A stretch of 64,000 nucleotides of DNA, taken from the IMG/VR virus record IMGVR_UViG_3300031787_000001, positions 222,786 to 286,785 of that record; one strand, written 5' to 3'. The first letter of the stretch is position 1. Each line of letters begins with the position of its first letter. This document shows positions 24,025 through 30,067 of this stretch, piece after piece. The notes below the pieces were generated by a model that saw nothing but the letters and a program-made list of their open reading frames with translations, searched no databases and was not told where the DNA came from. A program made the position numbers and the translations under genes.

Positions 24025-24966
24025 TTAATCTAATTGATGTATTTTATAATCGTCTAATTTTCCTTGTAAGTCGGCAATGTCTTTGTCGCCTTCTAATTTT
24101 ATAACAAATACTTTACTAAATAATTTACCACAATTTATTCTGTGATAAAGTTTTTCTGTATCTAACCAAGCATCGGGGTCAAGTACTAAAATTATTTTTT
24201 TTGCCTTTTCATATAATAAATTAAATATTTTTTCACTCATAAATTTACCCAATAACGGAATTGAATTTGGGATAAATATACTATCAAAAACTCCTTCAAC
24301 AATATAAATCGGTTCATCCCATTTTATTAAATGTTCATTCCAAACTATCGTTTCTTTTGGAACATCGGGATTTTTATATTTCAATTTTGTTTTTGACAAA
24401 TACGAACGAGCAATAAAATAATTTAGATTTTGTTCCTCATCATATGATGGTATCAATATTCTGTTTTCATAATGACCAGTATAACAAAATCCAATGTTAT
24501 ACTTTTCAATCATTTCATCTGTTATGTTTCTTTTTTTAAGATAACCCATTGCTTGTTTATAGTGATGAGTTAATTTTAAACCAGATGAAATATTTTTAAA
24601 TGGTACGAATTCTTTTGGTAATCTTACTTTTTTATATGTTCTATTTTTAAAATCCTCAACTTCTTCTGGTTTTAACAATTGATATTTTTTCAATTGTTTT
24701 GGTGTTCCGAATTTTTTAATAAGTTTATATATTGATCCGTGTGTTTCATGGGTTTCACAACAAACCCAACATTTATAAACTGAATATTTGTAATTAACCT
24801 CTAAGTTACCTTTACCGTCACCAGAATCCAAACCTTTAACATCGTATGAACAAACAGGACAGTCAAAGGACATTTGGTATCTGTAATCATTGTGTGATCT
24901 ACATTCACCAAGAATATCTTCTAATATCTCTATTATCGGTTCGTATTGTACTTCTTGTTCGGTCAT
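24025..24966 (-). CDS. DNA primase (zinc-binding plus TOPRIM domain)
   Basis: CPVC...CWVC zinc motif, RILIP, IVEGVFD, LDPDA, KDIAD; likely start MTEQE at 24966. Confidence 0.88.
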   Translation of the reverse strand: MTEQEVQYEPIIEILEDILGECRSHNDYRYQMSFDCPVCSYDVKGLDSGDGKGNLEVNYKYSVYKCWVCCETHETHGSIYKLIKKFGTPKQLKKYQLLKPEEVEDFKNRTYKKVRLPKEFVPFKNISSGLKLTHHYKQAMGYLKKRNITDEMIEKYNIGFCYTGHYENRILIPSYDEEQNLNYFIARSYLSKTKLKYKNPDVPKETIVWNEHLIKWDEPIYIVEGVFDSIFIPNSIPLLGKFMSEKIFNLLYEKAKKIILVLDPDAWLDTEKLYHRINCGKLFSKVFVIKLEGDKDIADLQGKLDDYKIHQLD

Positions 24967-24993
24967 TGTCAAATGATAAGAAAAAAAAGTGAT

Positions 24994-25030
24994 AAAAAAA
25001 AATCCCCCGGAGACACCAACTCCGAGGGAT
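24994..25030 (-). terminator. Intrinsic terminator
   Basis: Minus strand AUCCCUCGGAG-UUGGUGU-CUCCGGGGGAU followed by a U tract. Confidence 0.75.
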
Positions 25031-25062
25031 ACCAACCAACATGTATTTCTACATGCCCCGTC
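24994..25062 (-). ncRNA. Candidate ~65-nt small RNA
   Basis: TATTTATA motif at 25065-25072, then a GC-rich stretch with a CAUGUA-GAAA-UACAUG hairpin, UUGGUUGGU linker and terminator. Confidence 0.45.
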
Positions 25063-25117
25063 TATATAAATATAGTTGAATAATTATAAAATGTAAAATT
25101 TAAGTTGCCGGATTTTT

Positions 25118-25201
25118 TTAAAAATTTAATATTGCTCTATTAACACCTATTTTCATTGTTAATTCAGTTGGATTATCTGAACTATAATCTAATTCACCCA
25201 T
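25118..25201 (-). CDS. 27-aa mini-ORF resembling a tail-tube (gp19-like) C-terminus
   Basis: MGELDYSSDNPTELTMKIGVNRAILNF*, starting 1 nt after the ruvC stop; below the ORF-track size cut-off. Confidence 0.5.
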   Translation of the reverse strand: MGELDYSSDNPTELTMKIGVNRAILNF

Positions 25202-25202
25202 A

Positions 25203-25808
25203 CTAATTTTTTTCTAATTTAATCATGTTAACATAACCAATAACAGCAGTTGCGGCATCACTCATATCAAAGTTTTCTTTCTTTAATTTGTTATTTTTAT
25301 CATATAACCACTTAACATCTGCACAAACCGCATTTACATGTTCCCAAATTACTTGTTTTTTATCAATGTCTTTTGGATAACCACCAAACAAAACATTTTT
25401 ACCTTTGTCATTTTTATTAACTAAATCAGGAAATGCAAATTTTCTTGCATTATATGTTGATATAAAGGTGGGCACAATTCCCAAAGTATCATAAACTATT
25501 TTACAAATCATTGTATTATACCTCAATAAAGTCTGAACGGTATAAATGTTATTTGAATTTAACAATGGTTCTTCGATGATTACACGAAGGATACCCATAT
25601 CTTTATAATTCTCGATATGTTTTTTGAAGGCATCCGCCTTCTTCAATAATTCCTCAAGTTTGTCTTCAGGTTGAGGTTTTATTTTTGGAGAAAAGTGTGT
25701 TAATTCCAATAATTTAGAACCAGTTAAATCAAATAACGCAAATCCAATTGTCTTTGTTGATATATCCAAACCTAATATCTTTGGACTATTCTTTAATTTT
25801 ATACTCAT
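25203..25808 (-). CDS. ruvC: RuvC-like Holliday junction resolvase
   Basis: ILGLDISTKTIG, VIIEEP and FDMSDA acidic catalytic motifs. Confidence 0.85.
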   Translation of the reverse strand: MSIKLKNSPKILGLDISTKTIGFALFDLTGSKLLELTHFSPKIKPQPEDKLEELLKKADAFKKHIENYKDMGILRVIIEEPLLNSNNIYTVQTLLRYNTMICKIVYDTLGIVPTFISTYNARKFAFPDLVNKNDKGKNVLFGGYPKDIDKKQVIWEHVNAVCADVKWLYDKNNKLKKENFDMSDAATAVIGYVNMIKLEKN

Positions 25809-25846: not shown

Positions 25847-27952
25847 TTAGAAGTCTATTTTGATTGCAAAAACTTGTGTTCCTCTTCTAACAATTGGTTT
25901 CGCTGATTTAGCAACAACCAAGGCTTCTTTATTACTATCTAAAAGAGCAATCTCAGTTATCTTTTTATCTTCACCAGCAACATATGTTGGGTTCTGTGTT
26001 TCGGTAAATTGTGTACTTGGTAAGTTAACCAAAAAATTCATAACCTCAATGTCACTTGATCTAACAACTTTTATACTTCCAGGAAACGGTTGTTCATCAC
26101 CAAACTTTGGTTGCGTTGATGGTTCATGTACAATGTAACCATTACCAAAATAATTGTCTATCACATATTGTGTTCCGCTGTTATATTTTGAAAAATTAAC
26201 AATAAATGAAATGTCTCTTAAATTTACGGGGTCAAGAAAATTAACTCCGTTACCTCCCGCTTCTGTTGTAAAATCAATTTCAATCCAATCATCAGGTACG
26301 GGTCTTTGACCTGTTTTTGTTATTTGTACTAAAATTTTAAACTCAGTACCAACGAATCCATCAACAACATTTGGAAGAGTTGTTTTCATATAACTAAATG
26401 CGGTGGTATCGAATTTAACAACTAAACTTGTTGGTATTGTTGTGCCCTGTATTTTTGAATAATAATTACAAGGTAAACCATTTAAACCTTTATCTGAATT
26501 GGTAAAAGTATATGTCACCCATATTGTTTGATCTGTTGATCCTGTTAAAACTGAATTTGGTGCTGTGGTGTCACTTGGTACCAAATATAATTTTGGTGCA
26601 TCTAAAGTATATCTTCTATTGCTTCTGTAATCTAATAAAGCAACTAATTCTTGGTCATCAAAAATTATTGTTTTTTTAGTGTAAAAAACTTTACCAACTC
26701 TATTATTTTGTTCATCAAGTAAGTATCTATATGGTATATTTGAATTACCATTTAAGATTGGTGATGGTGTCGTGATTTCATAATCAACTGTATCCATATT
26801 AAATAACGCTCCAACAACATTACTTGTATTTCTATGGTAACAAATAAATGGTATAAATACTTGGAAGTATTCTAAATCAGTTAATGGTAAACCATTTTCA
26901 TCTTCTAATATTGAATCATTAACATTGTTATTGGTACTTAAATAATCATCATATTTAAAGAATCTTTCAGGATCAAATCTTATATCACCTAACTCTGAAT
27001 AATGTATAACCGCCAATACCCTTTGTTCTTCAGGTGTCACGGTTATTGATTCACCAAAAGAATTTTTGTACGATGTGGTATTATTAATGGTTTGTCCGGA
27101 TGATGTTGTGTATCCTAAAAATTGTTTTGTTGATATGTGTTGATTACTTGTGAAACCTGTTAAGTTTATGTTTGTTAAACCACTATAACCTATAGGATTC
27201 TCATTCCACACAACATTTAATGTCCACGGATCGTGTTGATCCATTGGATCAATTGGTTGTGGTAAACATATCGGTGCAACACTAGTTGATGGTGGAAATT
27301 CTATTTGACATTTATTACAAACAACTTGTGCAAAACCTGTTAAAGTTGATAAGTCTGGTGTGGGTCTATCAAGATATATTGTATTTCCACTAATACTTAA
27401 AACTTTATAAATTAAACTATTTGATTGTCCGGTTATTATTGGAACATTTGGATCGGTCCCACCAAACTGATCGAATACCAACGTAATATATTCACAAGTT
27501 TGAAATGTATCTCCAGATAAAACATCAATAGAAGAAGAACCATTAATTGTGGATATATCGATTCTATCCGTCACACACATTACCTTTGTTCCTATACAAT
27601 CAATATCATCATATTCAATATATTGTGAAACAAATCCCGCGGGACCCATCGGATTTCTTAAAATGTCAGTATATGAATTTTGAACAGGGACCCCATAGGT
27701 TGTTGTTGTTACTGTTGTGTCTATTTTGTATGGATATTTAACAACTGTTTCTTTATCGTGTGGGGCAAAAACTTTTTGAAATGGTTTTTTAAAAGTACCA
27801 TCTAAATTTGTAAATGGTGCACTATAATCATATTCGGAATCACCAATTTGGAAATATGAAATTACAAAATTTCCCTTAGCGATTGAATTTCTACCTTTTT
27901 TTGTTACTCTGGCCGATAAAAACTCAGAGTTATTTTCTGTTAAAAAGCTCAT
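25847..27952 (-). CDS. Baseplate/tail-fibre attachment structural protein
   Basis: N-terminal VTKKGR..IA......YFQIGD and C-terminal ITEIALLDSNKEALVVAK...P.....IKIDF resemble a split tail-collar/fibre-base domain. Confidence 0.65.
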   Translation of the reverse strand: MSFLTENNSEFLSARVTKKGRNSIAKGNFVISYFQIGDSEYDYSAPFTNLDGTFKKPFQKVFAPHDKETVVKYPYKIDTTVTTTTYGVPVQNSYTDILRNPMGPAGFVSQYIEYDDIDCIGTKVMCVTDRIDISTINGSSSIDVLSGDTFQTCEYITLVFDQFGGTDPNVPIITGQSNSLIYKVLSISGNTIYLDRPTPDLSTLTGFAQVVCNKCQIEFPPSTSVAPICLPQPIDPMDQHDPWTLNVVWNENPIGYSGLTNINLTGFTSNQHISTKQFLGYTTSSGQTINNTTSYKNSFGESITVTPEEQRVLAVIHYSELGDIRFDPERFFKYDDYLSTNNNVNDSILEDENGLPLTDLEYFQVFIPFICYHRNTSNVVGALFNMDTVDYEITTPSPILNGNSNIPYRYLLDEQNNRVGKVFYTKKTIIFDDQELVALLDYRSNRRYTLDAPKLYLVPSDTTAPNSVLTGSTDQTIWVTYTFTNSDKGLNGLPCNYYSKIQGTTIPTSLVVKFDTTAFSYMKTTLPNVVDGFVGTEFKILVQITKTGQRPVPDDWIEIDFTTEAGGNGVNFLDPVNLRDISFIVNFSKYNSGTQYVIDNYFGNGYIVHEPSTQPKFGDEQPFPGSIKVVRSSDIEVMNFLVNLPSTQFTETQNPTYVAGEDKKITEIALLDSNKEALVVAKSAKPIVRRGTQVFAIKIDF

Positions 27953-27979: not shown

Positions 27980-30067
27980 TTACATTCCCGTACATTGGTT
28001 TAATCCATAAATTTTGTAATTATTCGTACCAATAGTAATTATTTGTGGATTTGTTGTTAATCCAATTCCATTTACAGCCAAATTAATTACTCTTAAACTA
28101 GCAACACCGATTTCACTAACACCTGTACTATCAGTCGCCGATGTGTTTCCGGCAGGTAATAATAAACTAGGTAAGGTCGCGTTTCCACTTACAAATGTTG
28201 TACACGTCGGATCACTAAATCTTCTAATGACAAAATCGAAATCTAATAAATCTAAAGTCGTCCCCGCAATCACATTGACTGTTCCATTAATAAATCCAGA
28301 ACCATCACTTTCACCAAATGCAACAATTTCAGCGGTTATTCCGGTTGGTGTTGGTGTACTAGTTGGTGTTGGTGTACTAGTTGGTGTAGGTGTACTAGTA
28401 GGAGTTGGAGTGCTAGTCGATGTAGGTGTTGGTGTACTAGTAGGAGTTGGTGTACTAGTTGGTGTTGGTGTTACGATGGGTAGTGAACTGCAAAGTGACA
28501 AATTAAATCCTAAGTTATTTAGTGAGTTAATTATCAGATCTGCATAATATGATGGTGTTGACGCCGCCAAAGTATTTAATTCATAATTAATGTTATTTCT
28601 TCCAGATAAACCATATGTTGATCCAGTATATAGTGTTGATAAGGATGTATCACCACTAACAGCCTGAATAAATGAACCATACTCGGTACTTCCAATAACC
28701 CTAAATATGGTTGCAAAATATCTCCCAAATGGTAATTGATTTAATGTACTGGTTAAAGCAACCATATCTGTATCATACTGAGGTGTTCTGGCGGTTTCCC
28801 ATGATGAGACACCCCATTCTGCACCGTATGGACTATTTTCATCCGAAAAAACTAAATTAATAACAGTGGTTATTGATGGTGAACTACCTGTATTATTCAT
28901 CCATTGGAATATTCGTTCGTCACTAATTGATGTGATACTAACTCTTTGATCATATAAGACAGAATCATTATTAAAATAAGGTAATAAACATGGTTTTAAT
29001 ATTCCACTGTTCATATTGATTAATGGAGATAATGTTGAATTCATCGATCCGGATGAATCAAAATAAATATTTATTTCCGTATTTTCATCTATTTCTGGTA
29101 TGGTCAATTCATAAGTAAAATCACAAGGTAATGTTGTTCCTGTTACTTGAATATCACATGATGGTGGACATTCCTCAAATCTACTTGAAAAAATATCACC
29201 AACATTGGATGTGATTGCAGACCACATATACGTTGGTGGATTACTTACAGGATAATCAACATCATATGATAAAATAGAATGTAATGTACCATTACCAATA
29301 TCATCTCTTACTTCCCATCTATTATTAGATTCATTCCAAAATACATAATAATCATCACAACATATTTGATAATATGGTCTTTCATTGTAAACACCCATTG
29401 GATAATATAGTGTTGTATTATATTCTGTATCTGAACTATAACATAAATGATTAAAGCATACGGGGCATCCAATAAAAACAACCCTTACTTGAAATCCACC
29501 TTGTTTTTTTGGATCAGTTAATGTATTATTTTTTATACTACCGTCCCCATGTTCAAGAAAAATATAAACAGGTTTGTGTGTTGGACTAAAATTTTTAAAT
29601 TCATAAATAAACCCAGTAGATGGATTTGTTGTTGCCGTTGTTACAAATGTTGAAGCCGAAATTTCATATGTGAAACCTGTATATATACGATAACTATTTG
29701 GTACACCGTTAACGACAGATGAATGATTACCAAAATTTGTTGCACCTGAAACCAAATCATATATTGTAACACTACTATTAGTACAACTACCTGTGGTACT
29801 AACATCAAGATAAAAATCTACAGTATCATAACATTCATAAACCTTACTATCATTAGTATATATTGTAGTTATTGTTGATGTACCATCAACAATATCCGTT
29901 ACTTTTATAAAGTACCTCGTATCAAATTCCAAATTTGTTATAACAACAGATGATGTTAGGCTTGGAAATGCCCCAAAAAACACATATGAACTTGATGACC
30001 CTCCACTATATTCTACAATAAAGTTATGTGGTATTTGTAAATTATATAACCTAACATTTAAACCCAT
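27980..30067 (-). CDS. Modular virion protein (FN3-like, VWA-like, Pro-Thr linker)
   Basis: ITNLEFDTRYFIKV (FN3-like), IYFDSSGSM MIDAS motif with LVFSDE, TPTPTS repeat. Confidence 0.7.
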   Translation of the reverse strand: MGLNVRLYNLQIPHNFIVEYSGGSSSSYVFFGAFPSLTSSVVITNLEFDTRYFIKVTDIVDGTSTITTIYTNDSKVYECYDTVDFYLDVSTTGSCTNSSVTIYDLVSGATNFGNHSSVVNGVPNSYRIYTGFTYEISASTFVTTATTNPSTGFIYEFKNFSPTHKPVYIFLEHGDGSIKNNTLTDPKKQGGFQVRVVFIGCPVCFNHLCYSSDTEYNTTLYYPMGVYNERPYYQICCDDYYVFWNESNNRWEVRDDIGNGTLHSILSYDVDYPVSNPPTYMWSAITSNVGDIFSSRFEECPPSCDIQVTGTTLPCDFTYELTIPEIDENTEINIYFDSSGSMNSTLSPLINMNSGILKPCLLPYFNNDSVLYDQRVSITSISDERIFQWMNNTGSSPSITTVINLVFSDENSPYGAEWGVSSWETARTPQYDTDMVALTSTLNQLPFGRYFATIFRVIGSTEYGSFIQAVSGDTSLSTLYTGSTYGLSGRNNINYELNTLAASTPSYYADLIINSLNNLGFNLSLCSSLPIVTPTPTSTPTPTSTPTPTSTSTPTPTSTPTPTSTPTPTSTPTPTGITAEIVAFGESDGSGFINGTVNVIAGTTLDLLDFDFVIRRFSDPTCTTFVSGNATLPSLLLPAGNTSATDSTGVSEIGVASLRVINLAVNGIGLTTNPQIITIGTNNYKIYGLNQCTGM
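28343..28473. repeat. Pro-Thr linker tandem repeat
   Basis: Imperfect ~18-bp units encoding TPTPTS. Confidence 0.85.

What the first reader, a model, noticed from the sequence alone, without database searches (positions are those of the whole stretch)
25118..25201. 27-aa mini-gene resembling the C-terminal strand of a tail-tube protein, sitting in the nuclease operon
Seen: TAG-T-ATG coupling after ruvC gives MGELDYSSDNPTELTMKIGVNRAILNF*. Established (from recall): gp19-like tail-tube proteins of large myoviruses end in roughly FG(E/D)LDYSS.....I...L..D.AIL.(F/Y). The frame is closed just upstream, so this is not the tail of a longer gene. Inference: either a captured remnant, or a functional peptide mimic, such as a tube-assembly modulator or a decoy for defence systems that sense tail proteins.
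Basis: partly seen in the sequence, partly recalled or inferred. Interest (0 to 1): 0.6.

Follow-up and report, generated by a model that had tools for sequence, protein, structure and literature searches.

The report
Stray tail-tube gene fragment after RuvC
A 27-codon open frame just after a phage's RuvC-like nuclease gene is truly a copy of the last 27 codons of a tail-tube gene from another phage lineage, but only this one phage species has it, so it is most likely a recombination scar and not a working gene.

Summary
The ORF is real: window 25118-25201, minus strand, MGELDYSSDNPTELTMKIGVNRAILNF, in TAG-T-ATG spacing after a RuvC-like gene. Its frame is closed four codons upstream.

The likeness to tail-tube (gp19, PF06841) C-termini is statistically real.
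- A profile of 94 diverse tube proteins finds it at E 4.6e-5 among all 10,504 six-frame segments of the 287-kb genome.
- hhalign gives 95.9% probability, with all 27 residues laid on the last 27 of the tube.
- None of 2 million shuffles reaches its score.

It is not a copy of this phage's own tube gene (8/27 residues, 36/84 bases). The closest proteins found share 13-14 of 27 residues. No donor was found.

The segment is lineage-specific. In the nearest relative (RuvC 90% identical), 12 bases replace window 25119-25216. All 26 other related loci also lack it. The six other contigs that carry it are 99.95-100% identical, so selection cannot be measured.

It lies upstream of the RuvC terminator, and one RNA-library contig covers it.

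Best reading: a captured piece of a foreign tube gene, left by illegitimate recombination. A functional tube mimic is not excluded, but nothing supports it. Interest is modest.

The parts
25118..25201 (-). 27-codon ORF plus TAA stop, homologous to the last 27 residues of gp19-family tail-tube proteins. In the fold these are a conserved loop followed by the final beta-hairpin.
   Evidence: sequence; statistics; single phage hit, on a tube gene's end; AF2 model of the own tube: residues 136-147 loop, 148-154 and 157-161 strands.
25119..25216 (-). Lineage-specific segment of 98 bases. The nearest relative has 12 bases (TCACAGGGTAAA on the coding strand) in its place. It covers RuvC's last four codons and stop plus the whole mini-ORF. 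The 5' junction cannot be placed more exactly because RuvC tails vary among relatives.
   Evidence: blastn break against L006; alignment A1; one lake DNA run holds both forms; joint 25118/25217 with ATTTACCCTGTG between.
25203..25808 (-). RuvC-like Holliday-junction resolvase gene, 201 aa. Its stop TAG is one base from the mini-ORF's ATG.
   Evidence: phrog_159 E 3e-6, phrog_827 E 7e-4; 32 related loci, 50-100% identical.
25207..25213 (-). Run of seven A in the RuvC codons GAA AAA AAT, just before the stop. It gives the mini-ORF an A-rich leader. Loss of one A, or a +1 slip, would join RuvC to the peptide's frame (speculative).
   Evidence: sequence; this genome's starts lack Shine-Dalgarno motifs and are A-rich at -13 to -10.
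24993..25030 (-). Intrinsic terminator: 11-pair GC-rich hairpin followed by T9, 88 bases downstream of the mini-ORF's stop. The mini-ORF therefore lies inside the RuvC transcript.
   Evidence: scan; stem kept through compensatory changes in 10 relatives.
25031..25074 (-). Conserved spacer elements shared with relatives that lack the insert: TATATTTATAT box, hairpin CATGTAGAAATACATG, and TTGGTTGGT.
24025..24966 (-). DNA primase gene, the next gene downstream. The order RuvC then primase is kept in relatives.
   Evidence: PF08275; phrog_47 E 8e-40.

Best explanation
The mini-ORF is a piece of about 86-98 bases from the 3' end of a gp19-family tail-tube gene, stop codon included. The gene belonged to a different phage lineage. 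The piece was patched in at the very end of the RuvC-like gene by illegitimate, probably microhomology-mediated, recombination or template switching in the recent ancestry of this one freshwater jumbo-phage species.

Shown:
- It is homologous to tube C-termini.
- It does not come from the resident tube gene.
- It is present only in this species.
- It lies between RuvC and the RuvC terminator.

Inferred:
- Gain rather than loss, from its position on the RuvC tree.
- Foreign origin, because no copy exists in the genome.
- The ATG came with the piece or arose by one change. Met occurs at this position in a few natural tube proteins, for example Mel-JY01.
- The TAG-T-ATG spacing is a by-product of the junction.
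- The piece is carried passively in the RuvC transcript's 3' tail. Any 27-residue product (a loop plus a beta-hairpin torn out of a beta-sandwich) would be unfolded and have no role.
For: Homology.
Not the own tube gene: 8/27 residues, 36/84 bases, and no DNA match anywhere in the genome.
Lineage-specific:
- Absent from the 27 loci whose RuvC is 50-90% identical. Present only in the five with 100% identical RuvC.
- The carrier contigs are 99.95-100% identical over up to 12.6 kb.
- The window is sister to L006, which lacks it (support 94/96), inside a starred clade that lacks it.
- L006's 128-kb contig has the full tube gene but no fragment.
- One lake sample holds both forms.
Junction: both forms end in T, a run of A, then TCCGGCAA, and RuvC tails are variable there.
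The fragment scores at the median of real tube C-termini, as expected of a piece taken fairly recently from a working gene.
Against: - The frame is open, starts with ATG, has this genome's A-rich start context and sits in a transcribed stretch. A random fragment would have all of these only a few times in a hundred.
- No decay is visible, which purifying selection would also explain.
- No donor was found, so 'foreign' rests on exclusion.
- With only one species carrying it, neutrality is not shown either.
Confidence: 0.66

Rival explanations
1. A working micro-protein that mimics the tube's C-terminal loop and hairpin. It might act as a decoy for a host defence that senses tail-tube protein. 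It might cap the strand-pairing edge of tube subunits, modulating the phage's own tube assembly or poisoning that of a co-infecting competitor from whose lineage it came.
For: - Intact ORF with ATG, translationally coupled spacing, and an A-rich leader typical of this genome's starts.
- Inside the RuvC transcript, with an RNA-library contig over it.
- Its family score shows no decay.
- Defences triggered by tail-tube proteins exist: DSR2 (PMC10981675, PMC11087589).
Against: - Found in one species only, and absent from the nearest relative and all others.
- No sequence variation from which to test selection.
- It is 27 residues cut from the core of a beta-sandwich, so unlikely to fold alone.
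- DSR2 senses a siphophage tube of another family.
- No binding test was run.
Confidence: 0.15
2. The last relic of a second, ancestral tube-like gene that once lay between RuvC and primase. On this view it was lost completely in all other lineages, rather than gained in this one.
For: The structural gene block lies just upstream of RuvC in the window. The fragment's base composition (24% GC) matches this genome.
Against: It would need several independent, clean losses, because the carrier is nested beside L006 inside a clade that lacks it. More distant relatives show RuvC followed directly by the same spacer and primase. No relative shows any intermediate.
Confidence: 0.09
3. A C-terminal extension of RuvC. 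A +1 slip, or loss of one A on the A7 run (GAA AAA AAT TAG), would read ..LEK-ISMGELD..NF and append 29 residues to a fraction of RuvC molecules.
For: The A7 run lies just before the stop, and the mini-ORF's frame is open from within that run.
Against: A-runs are commonplace in a 28% GC genome. There is no stimulatory structure nearby. No length variants of the run appear in any contig. Relatives have no such extension. There is no rationale for a tube hairpin on a resolvase.
Confidence: 0.04
4. A chance resemblance, for example to a helix-turn-helix: the peptide's NPTELTMKIGVNRAIL resembles the Fis HTH.
For: phmmer against PDB sequences gives only Fis residues 67-88, at E 0.84. Pfam and PHROGs scans of the bare peptide give nothing.
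Against: The tube likeness is significant by four methods, and it is co-terminal and full-length. The Fis match is not significant.
Confidence: 0.02

Closest known systems
gp19-family tail-tube proteins of contractile-tailed phages (Pfam PF06841; T4 gp19, PDB 5iv5/5w5f; Microcystis phage Mel-JY01 tail tube)
   Same: The 27 residues align without gaps onto the family's last 27 positions and carry its hallmark G-E-L-D-Y-S-S-D loop and A-I-L-x-F/Y ending. The peptide's score equals that of a typical member's own C-terminus.
   Different: It has only about one sixth of the roughly 160-residue domain and no beta-sandwich core. It is not next to a sheath gene. This genome's real tube and sheath genes lie about 52 kb away across the record's ends.
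Gene fragments and short foreign patches left at gene boundaries by illegitimate recombination in mosaic phage genomes (general knowledge of phage mosaicism; not checked in a paper here)
   Same: A short piece of an unrelated gene sits exactly at a gene end. It is present in one lineage and absent in collinear relatives, and flanking synteny is untouched.
   Different: The piece kept an open frame with a start codon and the donor's stop, in coupling distance to the upstream gene. Most such scars do not look like a gene.
Phage structural-protein pieces that act on host defences: the T4 Gol peptide of the major capsid protein, which activates Lit protease (own knowledge), and tail-tube protein as the trigger of DSR2, with DSAD1 as the phage inhibitor (PMC10981675, PMC11087589, PMC11263360)
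   Same: These show that a short stretch of a virion protein, or a tube protein, can be what a defence system recognises. A free-standing mimic could therefore matter in principle.
   Different: Gol is not a separate gene. DSR2 recognises a siphophage tube of another fold family, and DSAD1 is a full-size protein unrelated to tubes. Nothing here links the peptide to any defence.

Membership tests
gp19 tail-tube family (PF06841) | Significant sequence match to the family profile | tested here: met
   Met for the C-terminal 27-30 positions only: HMM of 94 representatives E 4.6e-5 genome-wide; hhalign 95.9%; the genome search E 3.1e-5. Pfam's own HMM gives no hit on the bare peptide.
gp19 tail-tube family (PF06841) | Complete domain of about 150-170 residues forming the beta-sandwich that builds hexameric rings | tested here: not met
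   Only 27 residues. The frame is closed four codons upstream. In the AF2 model of the own tube they correspond to a loop plus the last hairpin.
gp19 tail-tube family (PF06841) | Gene placed beside the tail-sheath gene in the tail module | tested here: not met
   It lies after RuvC and before primase. The true tube (G000 about 13.7-14.2 kb) is next to the 948-residue sheath gene.
Recombination-derived gene fragment (remnant) | Homologous to part of a known gene, with the rest of that gene missing | tested here: met
   no upstream tube-like sequence in any frame.
Recombination-derived gene fragment (remnant) | Sits in an indel that collinear close relatives lack | tested here: met
   98 bases against 12 bases in L006. 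Absent in 27 loci. Gain inferred on the RuvC tree.
Recombination-derived gene fragment (remnant) | No purifying selection on the piece | tested here: inconclusive
   All carriers are 99.95-100% identical, and no variant falls inside the ORF in the metagenome contigs. dN/dS cannot be computed.
Functional phage micro-protein or anti-defence decoy | Conserved as an ORF across diverged phages | tested here: not met
   Pattern scans of IMG/VR and of JGI metagenomes find the motif only in the same phage. Relatives lack it.
Functional phage micro-protein or anti-defence decoy | Translated, and binds a defined partner | not testable with these tools
   One RNA-library contig covers it, but that shows neither strand nor translation. 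The peptide is below the 30-residue floor of the complex predictor, so no job was sent.

The most novel reading that the evidence does not exclude
A phage has domesticated the C-terminal loop and hairpin of a rival lineage's tail-tube protein as a free-standing 27-residue peptide, co-translated with RuvC. The peptide either blocks ring or stack formation of the rival's tube during co-infection, or soaks up a host sensor that recognises tube proteins.
Probability: 0.08. Interest if true: 0.8.

Novelty: new member of a known kind. Interest (0 to 1): 0.3.

Why it matters
As a scar, it is a clean, datable example of how jumbo phages in lakes exchange very short pieces of DNA. It carries one sixth of a structural gene, stop codon included, from another lineage, dropped at the end of a recombination gene while the neighbouring genes stayed collinear. 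It also shows that a peptide-length ORF can be assigned to a family with confidence when the profile is built from diverse relatives and the test is co-terminal. If the peptide proved to be made and active, it would be a new kind of structural-protein mimic, but nothing yet points that way.

Tried and rejected
- Pfam and PHROGs scans of the bare peptide: no hits. The peptide is too short for HMMER's filters.
- phmmer against PDB sequences: only the Fis helix-turn-helix at E 0.84. Rejected as chance.
- DNA and protein searches of the neighbourhood against 50,697 deposited phage genomes: no match. This phage has no sequenced close relative there.
- Own-genome source: tblastn gives only a weak E 1.3 hit on the own tube's end, and blastn-short finds nothing. 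It is not a recent internal duplication.
- Donor hunt: degenerate patterns for GELDYSSDNP in IMG/VR, and for FGELDYSSDNP and DNPTELTM in JGI metagenomes, found only the same phage or unrelated genes (a DEAD-box helicase, DapF). Three contigs in that list labelled human-gut metagenome (L048, L052, L061) were left unread.
- The closest tube representatives, P0238 and P0171, were traced to short Logan contigs. Their 3' ends are 47/84 and 54/84 bases identical, so they are not donors.
- Raw-read run X21: nothing laid.
- Rfam: no family reaches threshold in 24800-25400.
- No complex prediction was sent. The peptide is under 30 residues and I do not claim binding.
- The search for homologous proteins was not run on the peptide. 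Gene callers rarely-codon ORFs, so a blank would say nothing.

Full report
**What is there**

On the minus strand an ATG at 25201 opens 27 codons, MGELDYSSDNPTELTMKIGVNRAILNF, ending in TAA at 25120-25118. The upstream gene (25203-25808, 201 aa) matches RuvC-like resolvase families (phrog_159 E 3e-6). It ends in TAG one base before the ATG. In the mini-ORF's frame a TAG lies four codons upstream (..*KKISMGEL..).

Downstream come several elements, in order:
- a conserved spacer;
- an 11-pair GC-rich hairpin with a T9 tail (25030-25002);
- a primase gene (24025-24966; phrog_47 E 8e-40);
- then an exonuclease and an SbcD-like phosphoesterase.

The window is the last 64 kb of a 286,785-base IMG/VR virus record with about 29% GC. 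It has no relative among deposited phage genomes at the DNA level.

**Is the likeness to tail tubes real?**

The genome's own tube gene lies far away, at about 13.7-14.2 kb of the record. It encodes 162 residues (PF06841; T4 gp19 is the best solved match) and sits beside a 948-residue sheath gene. Its last 27 residues, FGSLDYKQDEIASIDCGLRPDRCILVY, align co-terminally with the peptide but share only 8 of 27. I then tested the likeness in five ways.

1. **Close-homologue profile.** I built a position matrix from the last 27 residues of 95 distinct close homologues. The peptide scores 23.1 bits without gaps.
   - That is the best of all 155,005 27-mers in the six-frame translation apart from the tube itself.
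   - It is far ahead among the 4,534 27-mers that end at a stop, where the next scores 8.7.
   - None of 2,000,000 shuffles of the peptide reaches it.
2. **Broad family HMM.** An exhaustive profile search collected 150 diverse representatives. An HMM of the 94 full-length ones finds the mini-ORF's stop-to-stop segment at 22.2 bits, E 4.6e-5, among all 10,504 six-frame segments of the genome. HMM positions 136-165 align to the end of the segment.
3. **hhalign** of the peptide against that alignment gives 95.9% probability and E 6e-9, with 27 of 27 columns on the last 27 residues.
4. **The genome search** with the same alignment reports the fragment at E 3.1e-5 in a contig of the same phage.
5. 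**A blind tblastn** of the peptide against 2.3 billion bases of phage genomes returns a single hit: the last 27 codons of the Microcystis phage Mel-JY01 tail-tube gene. That phage is also the closest deposited relative of this genome's own tube.

The homology is therefore established. The only rival resemblance, to the Fis helix-turn-helix, is not significant (E 0.84).

**Where did it come from?**

It did not come from the resident tube gene:
- 8 of 27 residues and 36 of 84 bases are identical;
- no other DNA match exists in the genome.

Against the diverse representatives it shares 13-14 of 27 residues with the best (P0171, P0238) and at most 54 of 84 bases. Its score against the family HMM is at the median of real tube C-termini (47th of 93). 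It therefore looks like an undecayed end of a working tube gene from another branch of the family. Degenerate-pattern scans of IMG/VR and of JGI metagenomes found the motif only in this same phage, so the donor is unknown.

Met at the first position is unusual but natural. Mel-JY01 reads MGDMDWSTDN there, and 3 of the representatives have Met at that position counted from the C-terminus.

**Who has it?**

A scan with RuvC gave 32 related loci.
- The mini-ORF is present only in the five with 100% identical RuvC. These, and a sixth metagenome contig (L069), are 99.95-100% identical to the window over up to 12.6 kb, so they are the same phage.
- In L006 (RuvC 90%, DNA about 80-84% identical) the alignment breaks exactly at 25119-25216. 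Ninety-eight bases in the window stand against 12 in L006, with collinear flanks.
- All other loci go from the RuvC stop straight into the shared spacer and primase. No six-frame segment of any of them matches the tube profile.
- On a RuvC tree the window pairs with L006 (support 94/96) inside a well-supported clade that lacks the piece, so a single gain is the economical reading.
- L006's 128-kb contig holds its full tube gene and no fragment.
- In one lake metagenome both forms occur side by side: a contig identical to the window, and a roughly 80%-identical contig that skips 25119-25216 with the 12 bases between.
- No variant lies inside the mini-ORF in any contig, so selection cannot be measured.

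**Could it be expressed?**

Gene starts in this genome have no Shine-Dalgarno motif. They are G-poor and A-rich at -13 to -10, a pattern I know from Bacteroidota-type initiation. The mini-ORF has seven A at -12 to -6, so its context is compatible with a start. It lies 88 bases upstream of the terminator, and so inside the RuvC transcript.

A 245-base contig from a metatranscriptome library (25022-25266, identical) covers it. However, contigs show neither strand nor ends, and DNA carry-over is possible. All of this is what a passive insertion into a 3' tail would also show.

**What would the peptide be?**

An AlphaFold2 model of the own tube (pLDDT 94.8) places the homologous residues as a 12-residue loop (136-147) and the final beta-hairpin (148-154, 157-161) of the sandwich. 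Cut out of that core, 27 residues are unlikely to fold alone. A role by strand pairing with tube subunits, or as a decoy, is conceivable but untested.

**Verdict**

The best explanation is a captured fragment of a foreign tube gene left by illegitimate recombination at the end of RuvC, in one phage species (confidence about 0.66). On this reading the ORF-like look (the ATG, the donor's own stop, the coupling distance) is a by-product.

The rivals are:
- a functional mimic (0.15);
- the last relic of an ancestral gene, lost elsewhere (0.09);
- a slip-dependent extension of RuvC at the A7 run (0.04);
- chance (0.02).

Interest is modest (0.3). The case is a tidy example of a known process, with a small chance of something new.

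**Limits**

- Three pattern-scan contigs labelled human-gut metagenome were left unread.
- No other genetic code was used.

Noticed in passing
window 24993-25074 (minus strand); also L006-L019 downstream of RuvC: The RuvC-to-primase spacer is a conserved structured element. It has a TATATTTA box, a hairpin (CATGTAGAAATACATG here), TTGGTTGGT, and then a GC-rich hairpin with a GGTGGTGT loop and a T9 tail. In 10 relatives, 14 of 22 predicted pairs keep pairing through changes on both sides. It occurs once in the genome and matches no Rfam family above threshold. It could be more than a terminator, for example a leader or small RNA ahead of primase.
   Followed up: partly
whole genome G000 (197 long ORFs): Gene starts lack Shine-Dalgarno motifs (GGAG in 1%) and are A-rich at -13 to -10. 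The phage occurs in lake and freshwater metagenomes from 17 studies. Its tube's nearest deposited relatives are a Microcystis phage and Flavobacterium phages. Together these hint at a freshwater Bacteroidota-like host, which remains unproven.
   Followed up: partly
window 25847-27952 (minus): The 701-residue protein just upstream of RuvC has no Pfam or PHROGs hit and no tblastn match in 50,697 phage genomes, although it is conserved in the related loci (collinear blastn).
   Followed up: no
window 27980-30067 (minus): A 695-residue protein carries a long Thr-Pro-Ser repeat linker (TPTPTSTPTPTS...) that matches only PHROGs of unknown function (phrog_15511 E 2e-9). The opposite strand shows a spurious 134-codon GV-repeat ORF (28143-28547).
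   Followed up: no
G000:C1 about 70.3-70.7 kb (outside the window): A 134-residue frame weakly matches the N-terminal part (positions 9-44) of the tube family HMM at E 0.09. It may be a distant tube-like paralogue, such as a tube initiator or terminator.
   Followed up: no
window 25207-25213 (minus): An A7 run lies just before the RuvC stop. Loss of one A, or a +1 slip, would fuse RuvC to the mini-ORF's frame (..LEK-ISMGELD..). No length variant was seen in any contig.
   Followed up: partly
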